A DNA stretch of 64,000 nucleotides, from assembly GCA_965644265.1 (NCBI GenBank), contig OZ286472.1, forward strand, positions 53,382,001 through 53,446,000. The letters are read 5' to 3'. Below the pieces are notes generated by a model, which was not told where the DNA came from, ran no database searches, and saw nothing but the letters and a program-made list of their open reading frames with translations. Below are positions 11,374-59,430 of the stretch, in pieces. Numbering within the stretch: the first letter of the stretch is position 1; each line of letters opens with the position of its first letter. Position numbers and translations under genes: made by a program. Source of the stretch: Glycera tridactyla (lineage: Eukaryota).

Positions 11374-12544
11374 TCTCATTCCCTTCGATTCACAGTCACA
11401 ACACCCACCCATGCACGCAGCACTGCTCTCATTCCCCATGCCTTTACCATCTACATACATGAATAACATTCTCAAGGGTCCATACAGAAACTCTTCCAAG
11501 ATATGAAACTGAGCTTTCTATGAGCGCTTTGTTGGGACATTTCAAGAATTTGACAGGAAAAAATCAGCCAATCAGTTGGCCTGAAAATCCATGTAGGATC
11601 AGGACCAAAATATCAACCTATGAAATATGTCCAGGAATGACTTTTTAAGACAACCAGGAACAATCCAATGCAAATGCTGCATCCATCTCAGCAGTTCTCC
11701 AAAACTTCAAAGTGTATCATTTGATCAATGGTGAAGATATGAGCTTTGGCGACTGATCAAAGTGTTCTGCCACAAAGGTGCTTCATTTGGTTGGCTAGAT
11801 ACAATCATTTGAGAAGTGTTGATATAACTCCAGTCAGAAAGATGGCAGTCAGTGCAAGGAATCACATAATTCAATTTGTTTGCATGTTCAAGTTAATCAT
11901 ATCTCAAAATGTTCTAGTTTCATTCAAGATATCAACTGTCACCACTGTTTGACTTGAGACAAATCTATTCTTAGACGACTGCACATCTACTCACTGCATT
12001 CATCAACATCCGATTCATGAACATATTTTAAAGATATTCTGGGCATATAATTCACCAGCCTGAATTAGCCAAAGAATAGGATAAGTCAGTTATATTATTC
12101 AACAGAATGAAGCAGTGATTCCTGATGGAATGTGGGCTTCATTTGACTTATTTCACTTCCAATGTTCAAATGTCAATATACCTGAGTGTCGTTTGGGACA
12201 AAATCTGCAAATGTGACAACAGAACCTCAACTCAACTATGTATGAACCCTTGATAATGATACAAAATTACACAACAACAGCAGAATTGATTGGATTTCCA
12301 GATTATACAAACATCAAACATTTTTGTTTCACAGAGGATAGATCACGAGTTGAATCCTATGGAGATTTGGGAGGATGTCCTGGTGGTGCCGGTGCAGGAT
12401 TACAGAGACCCAGTAGGAGGAAGAGGAGTGCAGGTATCATGAAGGTTAACAAGCAGTGTCAATATACATGTAATTGATTACCAACAGACTCGTGTAGATC
12501 ATACAGAGAAGAGAAGTCACTAATAGCATATGTATCTCCACAGC

Positions 12545-12800: not shown

Positions 12801-13826
12801 TGGGCATCAATTTGGCATTATTGAGATGCTCAAGGACGATCTGATGCTTGACAGTATTGCATAGTTGCTACAACATTATTTTCTCTCACAAATATAGTTC
12901 TAGCAGCTAGTTCACTTTTAGCCAAGTCATTCAAGTATGAGCCAAAATCATTGTGGGATTGCTTCGAATTTGGCATCACTTTAATTTCAAACTTGTGGTC
13001 CATACATGAGAAATGTGTTTTCCAGCCTAAAAATCATATATGATACACAAATTTCTCGTGAGTAAATGAGCTGTACATGAGGAAATAATCATCTCGGTAT
13101 TCGCTCCTAGCAGATTTTCTTTGAACAGTTTTGCCAAAAACAGATTTTTTTCAGCCAGATGCGGGAAGCTTTAGCCCCTGGCTAATTATTGGCTGATGGC
13201 CAGAGAGCATAAATGACTCCAGCCTCATGGTAAGTTCTCATCATATCACATCTGATAGATGCTTGATGTTGCTATGATATCAGGTGAGAATGCCAGTTCC
13301 TCATTGCAAAAGCGCTCTAATAACACAGGTATTATTTCCAGTCAAACCATAGATCCAGTAAGTGAACTGTCATGTATATATGCTATGAATGAAATCTAGT
13401 TTGCCATGCTCCACTTTGCACTTATCTAACAGGTCTCCAGATAGGGGACAGAGTGAGACTTTTTGGAAGGGAATGTTATGCTTTCTGTGATTATGAAGCA
13501 GACTATAGTGAGCACAGAGTGCAACAAGGCAAACTTAAATTTGACAGTACAACCATGATTGTGCAGAGAACAAGACTCTTGACAGGTGTTGGTTAGGTAA
13601 ATGTATCGAGAAGAGGAAAACCATTGAAGACAGTAGCGAAGGAGGAACGGCCTTACAGTGACCTAGTAGAATGCAGCAGGGTTTCCAGATGGCTTGCCAT
13701 CGGGGATGAGGGGCCAGTTGCTATGGCAACTGGCATCTGGAGGAAGCGGGTGATGCTATTGGTGGTGGTAGTGGTGATGGTAGTAGTGGCCCCTCCCCTG
13801 GGAACAGTCGGCAAGCGTGGAAGTAT

Positions 13827-13871
13827 TCAACCGAGCCCATGGTCCTCAAAGAAACCCTGAGGTGTCTCCTC
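13827..13871 (-). CDS. AP1S2: AP-1 complex sigma subunit, distal terminal exon (EETPQGFFEDHGLG*)
   Basis: Acceptor ttgttacccaaacag; phase 0, matching the phase-0 donor at 25679; 14 codons + TGA; acidic tail ending in GLx like other sigma-1 proteins. Confidence 0.88.
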   Translation of the reverse strand, partial: EETPQGFFEDHGLG

Positions 13872-16209
13872 CTGTTTGGGTAACAAACAAAATACAGACG
13901 ACGCTGTCAGCACGCATTCCTGGTTAGTTGGTCAAACATGCCAAGCCTCAAGTTAGTTCAGCCTCCACCAGAAATGATTAATAACCAGAACATATCATGA
14001 GACCGTGATGTCAATGAAGCAATGCAATTTTTTTGGAAATATGGATTTTTCTTCTCAAACTACCCCAACATATACTCAAATGTATCTCTTCTGAAACATC
14101 CAGCAATTTCCCAACTTCAGTTTTGCACCCAATTTTCAGAATTCCCGACTTTTTTTTTGAAACTTGGCACCACTAATGAGATCATGCATGGTTAGAAATT
14201 CACATTCCCCATCCACCCGGCGATGAATATGTCGAAAACGAGAACTTTCCCTGGAAGTTTATGTGTCATTATGTTTGATAAATCATTCAAGTAAACACAC
14301 AACCTGATGTACCACATGTATCCCCTAGAAAATCTGGGATGTATTTCTGTGCAACTGAGGAAAAAAGCTCTAATTCTTTCTGTACTAGGAATTTGCAAAT
14401 CCTCAATGAAGGTTATACTGAATTTGCTTCCATGTTCTTTCTATGTTTGTTCTATATCACTGTATACAAAAATATCCCACACATATCTCAGATATGAACT
14501 TTCTAGTTTCTAATGGCAGTGTTTGCAAGATCATCTACAGTCAACAGCAACCCCCTGACAGGCCACCATCTCTCTTGAACTACCAACTTTTTCCAAAATA
14601 CCGAATCCCACAAGAAACTATCTTATTTCGGGCAAATAGCTGTATTTTTGCATGAATATATTGTTTTTTATTAAAGGAGTCAACATACATTGATTTTGCA
14701 CCATTTCAATGCATAATATATTGGCAAATATTGATATTCATACTGCGAGAGAATCGCAAGGAGTTTCTCTGTGAAAGGTGAGTCCAACATGTAGGCGCAA
14801 AAGAACGGACAATAGGCTATAGTTCTTCTCCAATGGAGCTCTCACCGCACAGTAACAAGGATCGATGTCCAAACCTCCACCGAATGACCCGTCTTGAACG
14901 AGCACTTTTCCGTCCGTTCTAGGGTGGTCGCTTGCAACAGGTTTTACTGTATGACTGTTTGATATGTCAGAGAAAGCTAATCTACGATCAGATGGAAATC
15001 TGGAAATCTGTTAGACAAACTGGTAAGAAATGATGGAGAAAATTCAACAAATAGTCTGGTGAAGTGTCAGACATGAACACGTAATTGTTTATGTCGGACA
15101 AACTGTCTGACAAGACTTGGAACTTTCTGCAAATCTTGTAAATGCCCAATTTATCATCAAAATGCCTCATCAAAAATCTAAATTCTACCAAATACTCTTC
15201 AGCCCCCTTCGAGCATTAGAAAATAGACAATACATCATGACATATGTATGAATGAAGACTGTCACTGCTATAGAGCTAGTCAGCATGAACTTGTCCTATC
15301 AGAAACCTATGACAGATGATCTTAACGTACAGGGGAAACAAACTTAGTCTCCTCAATTCTTGAGCGCCTATAAATCACACTGTGTAAAAGCATTCCATCA
15401 ATCACTACAGTCAATGAAGGCAAGCTGAATTTAATGAATGTATCCAGGAGCTAGTCTGAGGAACTGGTGGAAACATTACTCAGGGGGACACAGAGGAAGA
15501 AATGGTGAATTAGGACAGGTCCCCAGGTGGGGGTACTGATTGATCAGTTTGTCTAATAAAAAAACATTTCTCAGTTGTCATGCAATATTACCATGGAGCA
15601 GTCTTTGATAAGAAATGGTTTCAAATCAAAGGTGCATTTGACTGACTCATCTATCAAAGTTGGATTGTGCATCTCCCTTTAGTTCAGTCTTCGGTCAGGT
15701 TTCACTTGATTCTTATTCAATCATCTAGTGTTTATTCACTAGTGCCATAGGATATAAAAGATGAAAAGAGAAGCAAGGAAGCAGGGATTAAGCAGAGAAA
15801 CAGTCAAACATGCATCAGACATAGCCACATCAACAAATTGTGTGAAACAACCAGACCACCCTCTGTGATATCTGCTTGAAAATGGGGCAAAAATGTCTCA
15901 AGGACCAATTAAAGCTGTCATGTCCTTTCACTATTTTTCTGATTCATAAAGAGCACCTGAGGTATACACACCTATCAAGGTCTTTCTTTTTCAGGTTCAC
16001 CCAAATCACATTCTCAAATGTTCCACTTGTCTTGAAGTACTCGGCTCTGATCAGAAGTCCGACAGATGCCAGAAATTCATTGACTTCAAGCTACTTCCAA
16101 GAATACTGTCAAAGAAGAATTGTCACTTATACTATTGTCTGTTTCCTGTGAGAAACTACATTTTGAGCTTTTTCTTCAGCCTGCACACTACAGCGTGGAA
16201 CATCCAGTA

Positions 16210-16386
16210 CAGTGAAATCTGCTTGAGTGTAAACCTGCGCAAGGCAAAATCCTGTCTTAAGCACATACCCCACGGGCTGCCCGGATGTTTTTTTCTCACT
16301 ATAATTGTCCTGCGCTAAGCAAAATCCTGTCTTGAGTGAAAGAAAAATTTGGTCCCGTGACTTTTCACTTAGGACAGGTTTTACTG
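16210..16386. mobile_element. pogo/Tigger-type MITE
   Basis: TA|CAGTGAAATCTG ... GGTCCCGTGAC ... CAGGTTTTACTG|TA. Confidence 0.8.
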
Positions 16387-16742
16387 TATTTTGTTCCTGG
16401 TGATTGAGAAATTGTCTTATCCTGTTCAGTATTGTCCCATTCGTTAGAGGTTAATGGGAAATGTCTCATTAAATTCTTTACTTAGGGATTTCCCCGCAAT
16501 ATACATCCAAAGAAACAACCCCTAGTGGTGCTGTTGAAAGCATGAAAATGTCTGACAAGATGGACAGAAAGCAAGAAGCAGAGATCTGGCAAAGGAAATG
16601 TGGGAGGATCAGATGAGACATTAATCAGAGCTGATCAAGCAAATCTGGACACTTCACTGATACAACACACCATATGACAATGACCCCAGAGTAGGCACAT
16701 GCTGTACAGGCTTCAGTCAGTCTCAGTCAAATGACAACCATA

Positions 16743-16927
16743 CAGGGATGCATCCAGGATTCTGGACAAATAACAATGACAATAAGAATGAAGCTCATTT
16801 CTCTTTGTGATGTATGCCTCGGTAAGGGGCCCGCAATCAACAAATTGTGTGAAATGCATCCTGGATGCGTCCCTGAATGTGGAAAATGCCCACATGCCCC
16901 CCCCCCCCCCCACTAAATGCAACCCTG
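16743..16927. mobile_element. CAGGGTTGCATCCAG-family MITE
   Basis: CAGGGATGCATCCAG ... AATGCAACCCTG; TSD not matched. Confidence 0.6.
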
Positions 16928-17117
16928 ATATTGATGATGCCACAGTTATGAAACAAAGGATAGAAGAATGAGGCTAGTCATTAGCTGTACTTCTGTCATG
17001 GCTTTGTAGGGCATAATCAACATACAACAAACCTCGTCTGGGCTGGACTAATACATATGCATGCAAGTGCAAAAACAAGCATGCATGTACATATGCAATC
17101 ATGCACGCATGCATGCA

Positions 17118-17291
17118 NNNNNNNNNNNNNNNNNNNNNNNNNNNNNNNNNNNNNNNNNNNNNNNNNNNNNNNNNNNNNNNNNNNNNNNNNNNNNNNNNNN
17201 NNNNNNNNNNNNNNNNNNNNNNNNNNNNNNNNNNNNNNNNNNNNNNNNNNNNNNNNNNNNNNNNNNNNNNNNNNNNNNNNNNNNNNNNNNN
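17118..17291. other. Assembly gap (N run)
   Basis: 174 consecutive N. Confidence 1.
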
Positions 17292-18123
17292 AATATGGCA
17301 GTGATACTAGGGTAACCTAGCAATCTGGCACAAATGTGGCACACTAAAGGACCAACCAAAAGTCGAGCCAAAATCTGCAAGTGCAACATGATTTTCAAAC
17401 TCTTGTGTGCCAAAATCATGGTTCAAATTTTAATTCCCAAGTCTTTGATAATAATAACAATAAAGATTTCGTGGTAAGCACAGACAGGAGCCTCACAAAA
17501 GCTATAACCAATAACAATACAAATTTGGACTTTCCATAGTTAAGGCACAGTTTAAATTTTCCCATGTTGCACACTCTTGTTTTAACAAGGGAAACCCCAG
17601 CTTTTGAAAAGGCCAAATATTACATCACATTCCATAATTCATCAACATACAAAAGTATCATTTTTCCTTTGGATCATCACACCTTCTGGTCCCACTTTGG
17701 ACTCTCTCTCACTTGAAAATCAATACTTTCATCGTACTAATTCTCAAAAGAGGCAGGGGTTAGATTGACCACAGACCCAATAAGTGACATCGAAGGTTAG
17801 AGGGGGGAATGATCCTAAATATCTTTCCGATCTTCTTGGTCATAACTGGTGTCATCAGATGGCTAACATTTCAATCATTATCATTATTGTCTTTCTCGAT
17901 GTGAAATGAAAGCCATATGGTAATTATGCGTCAATATCAGAGAAGAGGAAATTGTAGGGGCATGCTACGGGAGGTTATCGCTGTTAGAAATCCTTGATGT
18001 TAGGTGGCAACACAGGATGAAGGCAGTTAGTGGGTGATCGTACGTCAGCTACGGCGATGGTACACTGTAACATGCTCCTTATGTCATAGCAAGTCACTGA
18101 CGGTAAGTCAGCCAGCCAGCCCC

Positions 18124-18168
18124 CTATGTCAGACCAAACTCCCGAAGGGCCACCTCCACTGCTTCATC
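18124..18168 (-). CDS. AP1S2: AP-1 complex sigma subunit, proximal alternative terminal exon (DEAVEVALREFGLT*)
   Basis: Acceptor ttttatgtttcacctgtaag; phase 0; 14 codons + TAG; resembles the vertebrate sigma-1 tail (..VLEEIGLT). Confidence 0.8.
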   Translation of the reverse strand, partial: DEAVEVALREFGLT

Positions 18169-18933
18169 CTTACAGGTGAAACATAAAATTAAAGCATGAA
18201 ATGAACAAATGAAGCAAATAAATAGTGAAAATAACAAGTGTGCTTGAAGTCTCTAAGTTTATTAGGCAGCATCCCAGTATGGAACTCACTTGTAGATAAT
18301 TTACTATGGATCTGAACATTAGACTAGTTTTGTTTGTTTGACGTTTAACGGCATGTATCAACCCGTGGGTTATGTATGCCGTGTGTTCCTGGTTAATGAA
18401 AGCTAGATGTTCTCTACCCTGCAGAAATCACTCTCACAAACCCTGAACACAAGTTGATGGGAAGCTGAAAGGTTGTCAGTTCAGACACACCTCTACCTAA
18501 TCTGAACACACATAATAGACCTTTGATGGCATATCTAAATATGTAGAACATCGGACTAGAAATTATCCCGAGACAAATACATGTACAACATTTTTCATAC
18601 CAACTCTGTCAGATGAGAATCATTAATTTCATTGGGCCATTGATAGATATAACTTTATTTTGTTTCGTCACAACAAATTACCCCAATCAACTGGGGCTTT
18701 TCTGTGTGGACGAAAATTGAATGATATAGATATGCGATAATTTGATAAAATCCCTTCAATACATAGAATATCTAGTTTATCAGCACCCTTATACTAGAGA
18801 TTATTGCGCCAAAAGACAACAAAGATTTGACAGTTCCAAGAATGAAAACTGACATCTTAAAAATATTTTGAGAAATCATTACATTACAGTGAATCTCCTA
18901 ATTATCTGCACTGTCAGGCCACAAATAAATATA

Positions 18934-21473: not shown

Positions 21474-23475
21474 TATGTCTGAACCACTGAGTTTTCTGAA
21501 ATTCTCCATGATGATGGTGATCACGATTTTTCATGTGCACATCTTGGAGGTCATCAGAACTATTGATGTCTACAGTGTGCACTGTCAATCAGCAAAAATG
21601 ATTGAAATTACTAGGTTTTTGCTGAACTCCAGAACATAGGTATGAGTTCCAGAGTGCAAATCTCAAAATTCCAGTATTTTTCCAGAACAATAAAGTGAAA
21701 AACATGTTTTCCACAACATTTCAGGTATAGGTAATGAATTCCAGAACATTTCCAGAGTCTGTGCAAACCCTGAGGCAGGAGGCAGAAAGAGTGTATTTGA
21801 TAGCAATATCGTACATAGGAAATTCTATAAAAATGTCTCTTGAACGCAATGTTGATCCCTCCTTTTAAGAATAGACCTGATACATGGGATGGAATCAAAC
21901 ATCCAAGAATTGAAGCATGGGGAGACCATTGCCATCATTACATTTTTGTGCAGGAGCAATGAAACAAAAGATTGCACACAAACAATGGAAAAGAAAATGT
22001 GAAATCCTTGTCAAAATAGAGAGCAAGTCAGTGGGGTGAACCATGAAAACGAAGACTGAAAGACATCCACACATTTATTGAGTCAACCTGAGTGTGATTT
22101 CTGGTACTTTCAACAGTCAAGTGCTAACAACCAGTTGTTAAAATTAAGAGTGTAGAGAGATCTCAGGGAACACAGTAGAGGGGTCACTAATTGTAGCTGA
22201 TGATTCTTTGAAATAGATCAAGAAACCGATCATTGATTACAGATCTAGTGAAATCTGTGACGAGTGATTGCCCTAAATGTGAACAAAAAGTGCTATAAGA
22301 AAACGGAGGCATGGTATGACAGAGAAGTGACATGGAACTTTCGGCTTAATGCCAAAATAATTCACTTGTCCACACCCAATGATTCAGAGAAACCTGCGAT
22401 GAGAGACCACATTAAATGACACCGAAATATAGTTTCAGAGGTGGTCTCTTATCTGAGGTACAGTATACGTCAAATAAAAAAGCTGCCCCAGGGAAGCGTT
22501 CTCTTGTCAAAGGTGGACTTTCATCACAAATTCAAACAAAATAGTAATCCTGAGAAATTGATCTATTGAAGGTGGTGTTTTTAGAGGTCTCTTACACATT
22601 TCACTGTATCTGGCTACATGGGTATCAACACATAACAGGATGGGAGGAGGCAGATGAAAAAAAGGTGGGAAAAAATAAGATGCAAATGAATCACATCACA
22701 CCAACAAGATATTCATCCAAAAGAATATACACAGAAGTATACATCCCACGATGAAACAATTTTGCAACTTCAGTGAAGAAAGAACGGAAAGCTCGTCAAA
22801 TCTCAACAGAGGATCCAATTAGGAAAATCTCCCAATAAGAAAATGGAAAAACAAATTTGAGGGATGAGTCCCGGATTTAGTTGGCTGGAACCAATCAGCC
22901 GACAGTGCAATATCACAGAATTCAGTCAAAACATGAGTTGAACACTAATTCATGGATACTCAATCTGACCACCATACCAGTTGATAATACTGGAAGATCA
23001 AGTCCACATCAGCAGAATCCTTGTAAACAGCCCCTGTGATGGGCAAGCACCATACATTCTTCACAACTTTGTCTCAAGAGAGATGCATGCAAGTCACGGC
23101 TGTATTTGTAAAGGTATGACGAGAGAATGTTCTTGAAAGAAAGCTTGATTATCACAGGTACAGTAATTTCCACTATTTTTGTGACCCTCGTTTTTTTGTG
23201 ATCTTATCGGCCAGAACGTGAACATGGCTCATTATTTAGAGTGAAGGACATGTGCTATCAACTTTCGCTACTGTTGGTCATATACACAGCCGTCATCATA
23301 TAGAGCTCTGTGAAGACTGCAGACTGTACTTATTAATACTGGCGACATTACCTTCAAAGCACGACTTCCAACCATACACAATGTAACCAGTGTAGGGGAT
23401 TCTTCATATGTGAGGAATCACAATTGCGTCATCAAAGGAAAGTGTTCTCACACAGAGCGACTTGTGTCTTTCTTA

Positions 23476-24477
23476 GGGCTATTCCATTTATTAAGGAGTG
23501 GGGGGGCCGGTCTGGAACCGAAATGAAAAAGCGGGGGTGGGGGGGTCTCTGAAAAATCGAAAGCGGGGGTGGGGGGGGGGGGGGTCTCAGAAAAATCGAA
23601 AGCGGGGGCGATATTAGGTGAAAATCGAAAGCGGGGGGCGATATTAGGGGAAAATCCGGAAGCGGGGGTTGGTGATGATCGGAAAAATTGGGAAGCGGGG
23701 GAGAGGCGGAAATCAGAACTTTCGTGTTGAAAACCGACCAAAAACACCAAATCCGGCGACTATTAGTCAATATATTGCCGTCTCTTCGACGTGGCTCGTG
23801 TTCGTCATGGGCGCCGCCATCTTGGTTATCAAATCCAAGTCGGCAAACCGTGACATTTTTTCGATGGGCACATGAATAATGCGATAAAATGCCCGCAAAA
23901 TGGCGGATCCTCTTGTAAATGGCGATTAAGTGACAGAAAAATGTCCAAAATCGAAAAATGCGATGAATATCAACGAAAGGAACCGAAAATAATTTGTCAC
24001 GCTGGCGGCCACGTCTTCTGTGTATCACAGGCGCTGGCGGATTCGGCCGCCATCTACCGGCGGAACCCGGAGTTGTCGACGCGAAACACGAGATGGCGGG
24101 TCGAATTATTCGAGAAACACGTGTTCGGCACGCAGACCGCCATCTTGAATGCAAGCACGATTCTAGCGCGATTTTTTTCATTAATCATGGATTCTTGGGA
24201 TAAAACGCTGACAGATTCCAGATCATCCTTGTAAATTGCGATTGATCATCAGAATAATGTCAATTATCATGAAATTTGACGTATTTGTCATCTCAGCCTC
24301 GTTTTCGGGAAGCGGGGGGGGGGGGGGGGGGGGTGTCGCTTTCGGAAACCAGCGGCGAAAAATTAAAAAGCGGGGGTGGGGGAGGGTCAGAATAATCAAA
24401 AAGCAGGGGTGGGGGGGGGGGTGTAATTTTTTTTGGCTGACCGGCCCCCCCCCCACCCTTTTTAAATGGAATAGCCC
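23476..24477. mobile_element. PIF/Harbinger-type MITE (~1 kb)
   Basis: TTA|GGGCTATTCCATTTA ... TAAATGGAATAGCCC|TTA; perfect 15-bp TIR and 3-bp TSD; subterminal AAAATCGAAAGCGGGGG tandem repeats. Confidence 0.9.
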
Positions 24478-25678: not shown

Positions 25679-25816
25679 CTCCTGCAACAGATCCTGCGCA
25701 GCGATGGCCTTCAGAACATTCTTCTTGCTGGTTTCTTGCACTTCTCCGCCCAGAAGTAATTCATCTAACATGAAGAAGGCTTTCTCAAAGTTGAAGATGA
25801 TGTCTAATTCACACAC
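25679..25816 (-). CDS. AP1S2: AP-1 complex sigma subunit, coding exon ([46 protein letters not shown])
   Basis: ttgcag| ... GAG|gtaaga; 138 nt, phase 0/0; near-identical to known sigma-1 sequence. Confidence 0.97.
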
Positions 25817-26899: not shown

Positions 26900-27111
26900 N
26901 NNNNNNNNNNNNNNNNNNNNNNNNNNNNNNNNNNNNNNNNNNNNNNNNNNNNNNNNNNNNNNNNNNNNNNNNNNNNNNNNNNNNNNNNNNNNNNNNNNNN
27001 NNNNNNNNNNNNNNNNNNNNNNNNNNNNNNNNNNNNNNNNNNNNNNNNNNNNNNNNNNNNNNNNNNNNNNNNNNNNNNNNNNNNNNNNNNNNNNNNNNNN
27101 NNNNNNNNNNN
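26900..27111. other. Assembly gap (N run)
   Basis: 212 consecutive N. Confidence 1.
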
Positions 27112-28327: not shown

Positions 28328-28436
28328 GCTTCCAAAGTATTTGTCAAGAAGTTCCACATAACGATGTATGATCTCAAGTGTGAGCAGTTCATTGTCTTTT
28401 GGTTCAATGGCACAGCAGAAGTACAGACTGGCATAT
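28328..28436 (-). CDS. AP1S2: AP-1 complex sigma subunit, coding exon ([36 protein letters not shown])
   Basis: ttccag| ... AGC|gtgagt; 109 nt, phase 2/0. Too short for the ORF track; found by manual translation. Confidence 0.97.
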
Positions 28437-30898: not shown

Positions 30899-31077
30899 CG
30901 CTTATAGACAATCTTGAGATCCTTCCACTCCAGGAAACTGCACATTTTCGGTTTGCGTGCAAGAATGGTTGTGATGAGTTCTCTGGTTATCTTCTTCTTT
31001 ACTTTATCTGGATGCGCGACATACCACTTCTGAAGTCGCAGCTTCCCTTGCCGACTGAACAATAACATGAACTCCAT
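30899..31077 (-). CDS. AP1S2: AP-1 complex sigma subunit, first located coding exon ([60 protein letters not shown])
   Basis: cctttccag|ATG ... CG|gtgagt; 179 nt; hallmark [15 protein letters not shown]. The spliced protein from this ATG is 156 aa. Confidence 0.97.
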
Positions 31078-41735: not shown

Positions 41736-42203
41736 GTCAAGGAAGAGATTCCTATCAACACAGCCCGCCTTTGATATCCCAGTCGGCGTGCACTGGGCTC
41801 AGAATAGCCAACTTAAGAGAAGGCCGGTGGCGACATCCAGCGGCAGCGGATGCGTTTCTAACAAGACAAACAAACGACCACGCCATATTGAACCGTATTC
41901 ATTGCCATCGAGAGTCACTTCAAATTTTAGGTTTTCATATTCAATTCGATATACATGCATATACAAATATGAATATGGAAACTGTCATCACCATGGTAGT
42001 GGGCAAGGTTGCAGCTGTCGCAACCACCATCGTCTGCATGATAAGTTTAAGAAGCCTTTTATGAAAAGATTGAAAGTACATGTATATTCCAGAATATCGT
42101 GATATGAATTGTCCTTCAGTGATTACAAAGTCCCATCAGTGTGTGTGTGTGGGAGGGAGGGGGGTGTTGGCTGGGTGGATGGATGACTACCATTATTGTT
42201 TTA

Positions 42204-42204
<1 letters not shown>

Positions 42205-42262
<58 letters not shown>

Positions 42263-42275
42263 ACACACACACACA
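42205..42275. repeat. (CA)n microsatellite
   Basis: Direct reading. Confidence 0.98.
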
Positions 42276-42597
42276 CTGATAAGACTTCGTAGTCACTGAA
42301 GCATGATAGCTTGTGCAGCTGTATTCCAGATGTTTTTTACACATCCCCACCCGACAACCGGGACTGTCTTTCTTTGCTTTTTGAATTTACTGTTCCCTTC
42401 GGAAATCAAACTTTCACCTTCTTTTAGCACTTTCAAGTCCGGACTCAAGACCAACTTGCTCACTCTCGCATTCCCAACATGACCATATGATTCAAGGTCT
42501 GTCTGCATGTTCACAAGTATACGATGTCAACGACAAAGGAGACGATGACGATGATGATTATCATAGTAGTAGCCATTGTCGTCATCGTAATCGTAAT

Positions 42598-42647
42598 CCT
42601 CCTCCTCCTCCTCCTCCTCCTCCTCCTCCTCCTCCTCCTCCTCCTCC
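42598..42647. repeat. (CCT)n microsatellite
   Basis: Direct reading, ~17 units. Confidence 0.98.
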
Positions 42648-44539
42648 TTCTCCCGCTTGTCGTCCTCCTTCTCGTCTGCTTCCTATATCTGGGGTAAGTC
42701 ATACAGTGTGTCTTTGGACATTTCCTCTCTAACAACAACAATAACAATATTGATAATATTAATAATATAATTGATGATGATAATATTATCAATATTGATA
42801 CCAATGATAAAGATGGTCAAATGAAAATTCGGTTGAGAGAGGGTCATTCCCTACTTCTTGTCTCACACAAAGTTCTGTTTGATGTAATGATGAAACAATC
42901 AAACATCGCCGACATTTGTGTGATGTTTCAATCAAAGCGAACGGTTGTAGTGGGTGGTGGGTGTGAACAATGGTACCAGAAAAGGTCACTTATTTTGTGA
43001 TTAACTGTAATCGTTCGTTTTAAAATAAAGATTTATTACAATTACAATTAAACCTCTTTTACCCCCACATTGAGCCTGCATTTTTGTGCCCTCCCTGCCT
43101 GCCTCCTGACTTCATCACAATCACATCATCATTCCTCTTCATGTCCACTTCTGCAACCATAAATTACTCAAACATAGCAACTCAACAGGCTCTGATAAAA
43201 GTCACACATGAGCTATGATGGTGTGGAAGCCATTGCTCAACGGTACGCTATGATTCTGTGCAGGCCACAACCCAAAACATGTCCGAAATACTTTGCTGAT
43301 TGTGGGTTCCCCACTGGTACCAATGCTCATCAATAGCCAGTGACAGAAGCACTTGCTCAGGGTCACTCAGTTGCTAGGGATGGTTACCGCGGTGCCCCCG
43401 TTCGCGACGCTCACCGTACCTTCTTGCAAGAGGTCTATTGCGCACTGACACGTAGGTAGTCGTGCTCGGACTCGGTTTCAAATGTTATGATCAATTAATC
43501 AGACTCGCCAGTGATTGATTATCGACTAAATAATCGGAGTTAAGATTCATGTAGCTGACCTCACAATGCTGAAGATTCGCTATGAAATCATAGATTTGTA
43601 ACCATAATTTAGTGTATTAACAATGACTCCCCTAGTAAACATGACCGAAATGGGCCATTTCTGGTTTTATTCTGGCATTGTATGGCAGAAATGACTTATT
43701 GTTTGCCATTTAGTGCCTCAAATGGCCCATTTTTGGCTGTCATTCTCAAGCCAGATATGGCTTGCCATAAGTCAGCCTGAACTGAGCCATTTCGCAAGCT
43801 TCAACGCCATCTATTGACTGCCAGTGAAAAACACTAGTTCAGTGGATATGGCACATGGTGCTGCTCATGCATTCATTTGGGCAGTTGGGTCTGCATTGCT
43901 GGTTTGCATGAGGATGTATCAACAACAGGAGAGAAGTTCTCAAGACACATCAGGCATAACAGTAGGTATCAAAGACATTGGAGCCAATTATATCTGTCTG
44001 AAGTTAAATATTATGATCATGTTTGTGATAACTGACAGTAGATTGTGATGCACAGTTGCCTCATCTTGGCGGATGTATTGACGATGTGGTTCGAAATGGC
44101 AAGCCATATCAGAAGCATTTCCATACCATTTCAATGTCTTGCCTTTTCTACTGACACTATGTCTGACACATGTTGTGCTCTGAACAGTCATGATGGGATT
44201 CTGCTTAATACTGGGCATGGTTGAAGCAATGTTGACTACTTTATTCATAGATTGTTCTGTATCTGGAGGTTCCATTGTAAGATATTGTAAGCTCAGATTA
44301 TTTGTAATACATTGTATATCAAGCACATGTCAGTGTTCTTTGATAAAAACTTACTTCCCTATACTGTATTTTTGTTTGTGTTTATGCTGTGAATATGCTT
44401 CGAAAACAAACCTATGATGACAGGCTGATTGGGTAATGGATCTTCTATGGTTTGGGGAAAGAAAGCTAAATTGATATCATCTGGCCCATATCTGGCCCAG
44501 TTATGGCTGACCAAGCTGGCCTATTTCAGGAATGGATAT

Positions 44540-59269: not shown

Positions 59270-59430
59270 CAGTCCAACCTCCTCCAGAGACCACCTCCCT
59301 ATAAAGACTACCCTGAGCTGCGACCGTGGTAGTATTTTTAACAGTAAATGACCTCTCTATAGAGACCACCTCCCTATAAAGGCCACTATTGGATGTGACC
59401 AAAGGCGGTCTTTATATAGAGGTTTGACTG
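59270..59430. mobile_element. pogo/Tigger-type MITE
   Basis: TA|CAGTCCAACCTC ... GAGGTTTGACTG|TA. A further decayed copy starts at 59096. Confidence 0.8.

What the first reader, a model, noticed from the sequence alone, without database searches (positions are those of the whole stretch)
13827..18168. One AP-1 sigma gene with two interchangeable C-terminal tails
Seen: two separate phase-0 terminal exons, each exactly 45 nt, encoding DEAVEVALREFGLT* and EETPQGFFEDHGLG*; both are acidic and end in GLx. Known: vertebrates diversify sigma-1 through paralogues (sigma1A/B/C) that differ mainly in the tail and are reported to bind different partners. I recall similar dual tails in insects but cannot verify that here. 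Inference: alternative last-exon choice produces paralogue-like adaptor isoforms from a single gene, possibly tissue-regulated, since the proximal acceptor (taag) is weaker.
Basis: partly seen in the sequence, partly recalled or inferred. Interest (0 to 1): 0.7.

Follow-up and report, generated by a model that had tools for sequence, protein, structure and literature searches.

The report
AP-1 sigma gene, two alternative tails
This animal's single AP-1 sigma (vesicle-coat adaptor) gene carries two alternative final coding exons that give the protein two different 14-residue tails; the same pair, in the same order, is present and already annotated as isoforms in many other invertebrates, so it is real and ancient but not new.

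Summary
On the minus strand lies an AP-1 sigma gene: exons 31077-30899, 28436-28328 and 25816-25679, the last ending in phase 0. It is followed by two self-contained 45-nt coding ends, DEAVEVALREFGLT* at 18168-18124 and EETPQGFFEDHGLG* at 13871-13827.

The assembly gap (17118-17291) lies 833 nt past the proximal stop codon, in non-coding sequence. No reading frame crosses it.

Both tails are deeply conserved.
- The distal tail is identical at 14 of 14 residues in Daphnia, Chrysoperla, Mya, Lineus and others. All 14 third-codon positions vary and no first or second position does.
- The proximal tail is 11 of 14 identical to those of Daphnia, Chrysoperla and Lineus.
- In four other genomes the order (core exon, DEA exon, ETPQ exon) and the 45-nt coding length are the same.
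- The proximal acceptor is the weak AAG in all five genomes.

Transcripts from two other organisms show the DEA tail with its own long 3'UTR, which makes it a true alternative last exon. Hemichordates and echinoderms also make two tails from one gene.

No RNA data could be obtained for this genome, so use of both junctions here is inferred. RefSeq already lists such isoforms in dozens of species, but I found no paper discussing them.

The parts
30899..31077 (-). AP-1 sigma coding exon A. It starts at an ATG that sits directly after a cag acceptor and encodes [10 protein letters not shown]...IVYK(R). An upstream exon ending in ATG may supply one more Met, as in the homologues that begin 'MMxF' (inference).
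   Evidence: Sequence read. Pfam PF01217, E 2.3e-18, profile positions 2-60.
28328..28436 (-). Coding exon B, (R)YASLYFCC...KYFGS, with acceptor ccag and donor gtgagt.
   Evidence: Sequence read. PF01217, E 3e-12, profile positions 62-96.
25679..25816 (-). Coding exon [16 protein letters not shown]...AAQDLLQE. It carries the shared phase-0 donor GAG|gtaaga that both tail exons use, and it ends at the end of the conserved fold.
   Evidence: Sequence read. PF01217 profile positions 99-140 of 142. Aligns with sigma-1A residues 98-143.
18124..18168 (-). Proximal alternative last exon, coding part: DEAVEVALREFGLT plus TAG ('DEA class').
   Evidence: Sequence read. tblastn against the oyster isoform tail, E 0.005. 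11 of 14 residues identical to Daphnia, Chrysoperla and Lineus, at only 25-32 of 42 nt identical.
18169..18171 (-). Weak AAG acceptor of the proximal exon, preceded by a T-rich tract.
   Evidence: The acceptor reads aag|GA in the window, Daphnia, Chrysoperla, Lineus and Mya.
17292..18123 (-). Candidate 3'UTR of the proximal isoform. It contains ATTAAA at 17434-17429 and runs into the assembly gap.
   Evidence: Poly(A)-signal scan. This part is inferred; no RNA evidence.
17118..17291 (.). Assembly gap (N run) in non-coding sequence between the two tail exons.
13827..13871 (-). Distal alternative last exon, coding part: EETPQGFFEDHGLG plus TGA ('ETPQ class'), with a strong acag acceptor.
   Evidence: Sequence read. 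tblastn E 1.2e-9. 14 of 14 residues identical in four other genomes, with only third-codon positions varying.
12980..13826 (-). Candidate 3'UTR of the distal isoform, with the first ATTAAA at 12985-12980.
   Evidence: Poly(A)-signal scan. This part is inferred.

Best explanation
The window holds the single-copy-type AP-1 sigma (sigma1 adaptin) gene of a protostome. After the last core exon, which ends exactly where the conserved sigma fold ends, the primary transcript can take one of two routes.

(a) It is spliced to a proximal terminal exon through a weak AAG acceptor and polyadenylated shortly after. This gives the tail DEAVEVALREFGLT.

(b) It skips that exon and is spliced to a distal terminal exon with a strong CAG acceptor. 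This gives the tail EETPQGFFEDHGLG.

The two exons are ancient tandem duplicates of one terminal exon, because both align with the vertebrate sigma-1A tail. Each has been kept by purifying selection across protostome phyla. The result is two AP-1 complexes that differ only in a 14-residue acidic C-terminal appendage of sigma1. This probably changes which accessory proteins or cargo the adaptor binds, as vertebrates do with the paralogues sigma1A, B and C.

Shown: the gene model, both exons, their homology, the conserved order, length, phase and acceptor type, and alternative-last-exon transcripts in other organisms.

Inferred: that both junctions are used in this animal, that the weak acceptor is what lets the distal exon compete, and that the tails bind different partners.
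For: - Gene model and sigma1 identity: (the core is 92-95% identical to arthropod sigma1).
- Tail classes in homologues.
- Identical cores with different tails in one species: Ptychodera X1/X2, Amphiura X4/X5, Priapulus X1/X2/X3 and ticks.
- Same exon order and 45-nt coding length in Daphnia, Chrysoperla, Lineus and Mya.
- ETPQ exon: 14 variable nucleotide sites, all at third-codon positions, and no amino-acid change among five genomes.
- DEA exon: 11 of 14 residues conserved at 25-32 of 42 nt identity.
- AAG acceptor in five of five genomes.
- Spliced DEA-tail transcripts L001-L007 carry their own 3'UTRs, up to about 3 kb, with no ETPQ exon in them.
- ETPQ-tail full-length products lie on contigs of about 1 kb, so they come from transcripts (P0069, P0196, P0197).
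- Both tails align with the sigma-1A tail EDESPRSVLEEMGL.
- Sigma2 of AP-2 stops at residue 142, so the tail is an appendage to the fold.
- Tail-dependent partner choice in vertebrates: PMC4944158.
Against: - There is no RNA evidence from this genome. The one sequencing-run search returned a single run of DNA-like contigs covering repeats and intron as well as exon.
- The poly(A) signals are only consensus matches, and the proximal 3' end may lie in the gap.
- The structure models say little about the tails. The DEA-class model was poor (pLDDT 54). The ETPQ tail was modelled as unstructured with pLDDT below 50.
- Many of the supporting isoforms are automatic RefSeq predictions.
Confidence: 0.85

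Rival explanations
1. The proximal exon is used mainly as an internal cassette, not as a terminal exon. One route is a donor after its stop codon, which would give the same protein but the distal 3'UTR or nonsense-mediated decay. The other is the internal G|GT in its Gly-Leu codons: 34 nt are included, and the distal exon is then read in the +1 frame as ...REF-GGDTSGFL*.
For: - The window has TTTG|GTCTGA inside the exon, and the +1 frame of the distal exon reads GGDTSGFL*.
- Chrysoperla isoform X1 (...REIG-RNSSRIF) and a transcriptome protein, P0195 (...RDIG-GSTSRII), have exactly this structure.
- Lineus X1 reaches the same +1 frame through a separate 34-nt cassette with good splice sites.
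Against: - DEA-tail transcripts in two organisms end in their own long 3'UTR without the distal exon.
- Third-codon positions of the distal exon vary freely, so the +1 frame is not under selection. In Mya the +1 stop is lost.
- Lineus lacks the internal GT (GGA TTA).
Confidence: 0.08
2. Only the distal (ETPQ) tail is made in this species, and the proximal exon is a conserved-looking relic that is no longer used.
For: - There is no RNA evidence for either junction here.
- The proximal acceptor is weak.
Against: - The frame, stop, acceptor and T-rich tract are all intact.
- 11 of 14 residues are kept against Lineus at only 25 of 42 identical nucleotides, which is the signature of ongoing protein-level selection.
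- The weak acceptor is itself conserved in all five genomes.
Confidence: 0.04
3. The gene has more than two tails. A third terminal exon of the ESEEPKGILEELGL type (the class closest to vertebrate tails) lies beyond the window's start or in unassembled sequence, so 'two interchangeable tails' is incomplete.
For: - Lineus and Mya have such a third exon 5 kb and 8.5 kb downstream of the ETPQ exon.
- P0059, a transcript whose protein is 100% identical to the window over exon C, carries this tail.
Against: - No such exon was found in the 13.8 kb downstream of the distal exon, by tblastn or by pattern scan.
- Daphnia and Chrysoperla showed none within the loci read.
- P0059 is only about 80% identical at nucleotide level, so it is not a close relative.
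Confidence: 0.3

Closest known systems
RefSeq/UniProt 'AP-1 complex subunit sigma-2 isoform X1..X5' of invertebrates (for example Lineus longissimus, oysters, Mya arenaria, ticks, Daphnia pulex, many insects, Priapulus caudatus)
   Same: - Same gene, with the same two tail classes. The ETPQ tail is identical and the DEA tail is 8-11 of 14 identical.
- Same exon order, 45-nt coding length, phase 0 and AAG acceptor.
   Different: - This species' own tail differs at a few residues (V6, F11, T14).
- Some relatives have extra tails not found in the window: ESEEPK...LEELGL, DEMLEAGVQD in ticks, a 34-nt frameshifting cassette in Lineus, and donor read-through tails in insects and Daphnia.
Vertebrate sigma1 paralogues AP1S1/AP1S2/AP1S3 (sigma1A, B, C)
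   Same: - Same fold and same position of the variable part, after ...DLLQE, residue 143.
- The tails are homologous: EDESPRSVLEEMGLA and EAETPRSVLEEIGLT align with both window tails.
- Tail-region differences are linked to different partners (PMC4944158).
   Different: Vertebrates get the diversity mainly from separate genes. Here it comes from alternative last exons of one gene. The ETPQ class was seen only in protostomes in my searches.
Two-tail sigma1 genes of invertebrate deuterostomes (Ptychodera flava X1/X2, Amphiura filiformis X4/X5)
   Same: One core with two alternative 15-residue tails ending in G-[LF]-x.
   Different: The tail classes differ: ...NRSVLEEIGLT and ...RNALEEMGFL. Orthology of either to the window's classes cannot be settled from 14-15 residues.
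Mouse/human AP1S2 alternative 3' ends
   Same: A preprint reports coding changes through alternative 3' end usage, spatially variable in mouse brain (10.1101/2025.05.02.651907). Another reports a detected peptide from an AP1S2 cryptic last exon (10.64898/2026.01.30.702498).
   Different: I did not see the vertebrate alternative tail sequences, so homology to the exons here is untested.

Membership tests
AP-1 sigma subunit (sigma1 adaptin; Pfam Clat_adaptor_s PF01217) | Full-length match to the clathrin adaptor small-chain fold | tested here: met
   The three exons cover profile positions 2-140 of 142, with E 2e-18, 3e-12 and 2e-13.
AP-1 sigma subunit (sigma1 adaptin; Pfam Clat_adaptor_s PF01217) | Closer to sigma1 than to sigma2, sigma3 or sigma4 | tested here: met
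   Exon C scores E 4.8e-18 against sigma-1A, 8e-9 against sigma2, 3e-5 against sigma3 (AP-3) and 6e-5 against sigma4. The assembled core is 92-95% identical to annotated arthropod AP-1 sigma.
AP-1 sigma subunit (sigma1 adaptin; Pfam Clat_adaptor_s PF01217) | Assembles into the AP-1 heterotetramer | not testable with these tools
   Inferred from sequence identity only.
Alternative last exon (ALE) pair | One shared upstream donor; each exon with its own in-phase acceptor and own stop codon | tested here: met
   Donor at 25679 in phase 0; acceptors at 18168 and 13871; stops ending at 18124 and 13827.
Alternative last exon (ALE) pair | The proximal exon has its own 3'UTR and poly(A) site | tested here: inconclusive
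   ATTAAA at 17434, then the gap. In other organisms DEA-tail mRNAs do have their own 3'UTR without the distal exon.
Alternative last exon (ALE) pair | Both junctions seen in RNA of this organism | tested here: inconclusive
   The only run found (X1) holds DNA-like contigs and no junction information.
Orthologue of the annotated invertebrate sigma1 tail isoforms | Tail sequence, exon order, coding length and acceptor type shared with annotated loci | tested here: met

The most novel reading that the evidence does not exclude
The alternative-tail system of sigma1 is an ancient device, at least bilaterian-wide, for making functionally distinct AP-1 complexes. One tail, EETPQGFFEDHGLG, was invariant at all 14 residues in every protostome genome read here, despite saturated synonymous change. 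That would imply a specific, still unidentified binding partner or intramolecular contact. A conserved weak AAG acceptor would set the isoform ratio. Vertebrates would have partitioned the same function among the paralogues sigma1A, B and C. No paper I could search describes this.
Probability: 0.45. Interest if true: 0.55.

Novelty: new member of a known kind. Interest (0 to 1): 0.35.

Why it matters
The sigma1 tail is the main place where vertebrate AP-1 variants differ, and sigma1A and sigma1B defects cause distinct human syndromes. What the tail does is still poorly defined. If animals with one sigma1 gene make the same kind of diversity by exon choice, and have kept one tail letter-perfect for more than half a billion years, then tail-specific AP-1 functions are old and strongly selected. 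They could then be dissected with simple exon-specific knockouts in flies, Daphnia or other invertebrates. For this window alone the result is an ordinary, well-conserved gene feature.

Tried and rejected
1. RNA evidence. My single sequencing-run run, on 13000-18400, found only run X1 (share 0.05). Laid on the stretch, it gave DNA-like contigs over repeats, intron and the distal exon region, with no informative joints. The joints listed there involve the high-copy repeat at 18249-18400 and are not splice junctions.

2. Third-class tail exon. tblastn and pattern scans found none in the gene region or downstream. The hits at 59287 and 58198 lie upstream of the gene in repeat-like sequence without exon features. 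The hit at 11502 has no acceptor or frame.

3. Structure prediction of the two isoform classes. The DEA-class model failed: pLDDT 54 and the wrong, all-helical fold. The ETPQ-class core was acceptable (pLDDT 77) but the tail was unstructured at pLDDT below 50. No structural conclusion is drawn.

4. Genomic loci for oyster X3 and Nematostella X2 were not on record, because only the longest isoform of a gene is indexed.

5. Exact look-up of this animal's two spliced proteins in the protein collections was left out. A spliced product has no reference, and I did not type long sequences.

6. The +1-frame reading of the distal exon as a selected coding frame is rejected, because all of its variation follows frame-0 third positions.

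7. Literature. Searches for sigma1 splice variants or alternative exons found only gene-paralogue descriptions in reviews.
Full report
**What is there**

Reading the minus strand gives a clean AP-1 sigma gene.
- Exon A is 31077-30899. Its ATG sits directly after a cag acceptor.
- Exon B is 28436-28328.
- Exon C is 25816-25679 and ends ...DLLQE|gtaaga in phase 0.

The three exons cover Pfam Clat_adaptor_s positions 2-140 of 142. Exon C matches solved sigma-1A (E 4.8e-18) far better than sigma2, sigma3 or sigma4.

- Proximal: tgtaag|GAT...TAG at 18168-18124, encoding DEAVEVALREFGLT.
- Distal: aaacag|GAG...TGA at 13871-13827, encoding EETPQGFFEDHGLG.

Each is 45 nt with its stop. That is the coding part; real terminal exons also include a 3'UTR. 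Joined to the core, either gives a 156-residue protein. It would be 157 residues if an upstream exon supplies a first Met, as the 'MMxF' starts of homologues suggest (inference).

**The gap**

The N run at 17118-17291 lies 833 nt after the proximal stop codon and 3.2 kb before the distal acceptor. Each tail exon joins exon C directly and ends at its own stop, so no frame is read across the gap and the finding does not depend on it. The gap does leave three things unknown: the intron length, the proximal poly(A) site (a candidate ATTAAA at 17434 precedes it), and any sequence hidden in it. In four other genomes the same interval has no gaps, and my pattern scan found no further tail-like exon in it. 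A second gap, 26900-27111, sits in the intron between exons B and C and is irrelevant to the tails.

**Are the exons real?**

To search full-length relatives by reference, I used the natural 98-codon open frame around exon C and scored only the exon part. I then searched with two hits as queries. The tails after ...DLLQE fall into a few classes.

- The distal tail, EETPQGFFEDHGLG, is identical in an annelid (Ridgeia), gastropods (Littorina, Elysia), Lepidoptera, a wasp, a spider, Ixodes and Priapulus.
- The proximal tail belongs to a class seen as DEAVEGALREIGLL (many insects, Daphnia), DEAVENALKEFGLI (ticks), DEAFETALKEHGLY (oysters) and DEALETALQEYGLT (a nemertean).

A permissive tblastn of such tails against the whole window hit only these two places inside the gene, at E 1.2e-9 and 0.005.

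**Conserved gene architecture**

I fetched four annotated loci: Daphnia pulex, Mya arenaria, Lineus longissimus and Chrysoperla carnea. I then mapped the exons.

- In all four, as in the window, the order is core exon, then DEA exon, then ETPQ exon.
- Both coding parts are exactly 45 nt.
- The DEA exon always has an AAG acceptor (cctaag, ttaaag, tctaag, tttaaag, and tgtaag here). The ETPQ exon has CAG or TAG.

A at position -3 is an unfavoured acceptor base (established knowledge). Its retention while the surrounding intron has diverged suggests selection for a weak site.

Among the five genomes, the ETPQ exon has 14 variable nucleotide sites, all at third-codon positions, and no amino-acid change. 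The DEA exon keeps 11 of 14 residues between the window and Lineus at only 25 of 42 identical nucleotides. Both exons are therefore translated in the stated frame and are under strong purifying selection.

**How the choice is made**

Seven spliced transcript contigs from two unidentified organisms encode DEA tails (L001-L007). Each is followed by its own 3'UTR, up to about 3 kb, that contains no ETPQ exon. In those organisms the DEA exon is a true alternative last exon with its own polyadenylation.

Full-length ETPQ-tail products lie on contigs of about 1 kb (P0069, P0196, P0197), so they come from transcripts that skip the DEA exon.

The likely mechanism here is competition. On one side is splicing to the early but weak proximal acceptor, followed by proximal polyadenylation. 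On the other is splicing to the later, strong distal acceptor. This is inference: I could not get RNA data for this genome.

**What the tails are**

Both tails align position for position with the sigma-1A tail EDESPRSVLEEMGL, so they are duplicates of one ancestral terminal exon. The tail begins where the conserved fold ends, and AP-2 sigma2 stops at residue 142. It is therefore an AP-1-specific appendage.

[quoted passage not shown] By analogy the two isoforms here probably recruit different partners. This is not shown.

My structure models did not help. One failed. The other left the ETPQ tail unstructured at low confidence.

**Breadth**

Identical cores with different tails occur in the following.
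- Ptychodera: EMDGNRSVLEEIGLT and EADAMRNALEEMGFL.
- Amphiura: the same two classes.
- Priapulus: three tails.
- Ticks: DEA, DEMLEAGVQD and ETPQ tails.

A Nematostella 'isoform X2' carries a DEA-like tail. Alternative sigma1 tails are thus at least bilaterian-wide. The ETPQ class appeared only in protostomes in my searches, which places this genome among protostomes.

Lineus and Mya have a third exon of the type closest to vertebrate tails (EDDEPKSILEEIGLIG and ESEEPKGLLEELGFTVGS), 5 kb and 8.5 kb beyond the ETPQ exon. I found none in the 13.8 kb available here, so 'two tails' means 'at least two'.

**Novelty**

RefSeq and UniProt already list these isoforms (X1 to X5) for dozens of invertebrates, so the window's gene is a further member of a known, annotated pattern. 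The reviews I read give only the gene-encoded sigma1A, B and C. The one general mention of alternative splicing of AP subunits is not specific to sigma1. Two preprints touch on AP1S2 alternative 3' ends in vertebrates. I found no paper on the invertebrate tails, on the invariance of the ETPQ tail, or on the conserved weak acceptor. The scan's own notes contain nothing on it.

**Verdict**

- The feature is ordinary and conserved, of moderate interest mainly as a lead for tail-specific AP-1 function.

Noticed in passing
L008:4375-4407 (Daphnia) and L011:12045-12077 (Chrysoperla); absent at window 25678-25640: In Daphnia and Chrysoperla the intron just after the core exon's donor reads in frame as a conserved 10-codon acidic peptide plus stop (VSNDANPVAL*, VSNGDSAIDL*). 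Many anonymous contigs give similar read-through ends (VSxxxxPIEL*), and mosquito RefSeq isoforms end VLDEDDYFWIY. This looks like a further tail made by not splicing the donor, or else a conserved splicing element. The window's read-through, [10 protein letters not shown]..., is not of this kind.
   Followed up: partly
window 13849-13872 (minus strand, +1 frame of the distal exon); L010:16100-16133: The distal exon read in the +1 frame gives GGDTSGFL*. Lineus isoform X1 reaches this frame through a 34-nt cassette exon (QSETDPIEPFQ, with good tag and gtaaac splice sites). Chrysoperla X1 and a transcriptome protein reach it through a G|GT donor inside the DEA exon. The window has the same internal TTTG|GTCTGA. 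Third-position variation argues against selection on this frame.
   Followed up: partly
window 16077-16438 and 18249-18400: Very high contig depth in run X1 (thousands-fold against about 10 elsewhere) marks two high-copy repeats within the introns of the gene.
   Followed up: no
window 23435-24184 (minus strand): A 250-codon open frame with proline-rich repeated segments (PPPPP...LFxFS) lies inside the intron between the core exon and the proximal tail exon. It looks like part of a repeat or mobile element and was not examined.
   Followed up: no
window 42119-42700: A (TG)n microsatellite and a long GAG/GAA (poly-Glu in one frame) simple repeat lie upstream of the gene.
   Followed up: no
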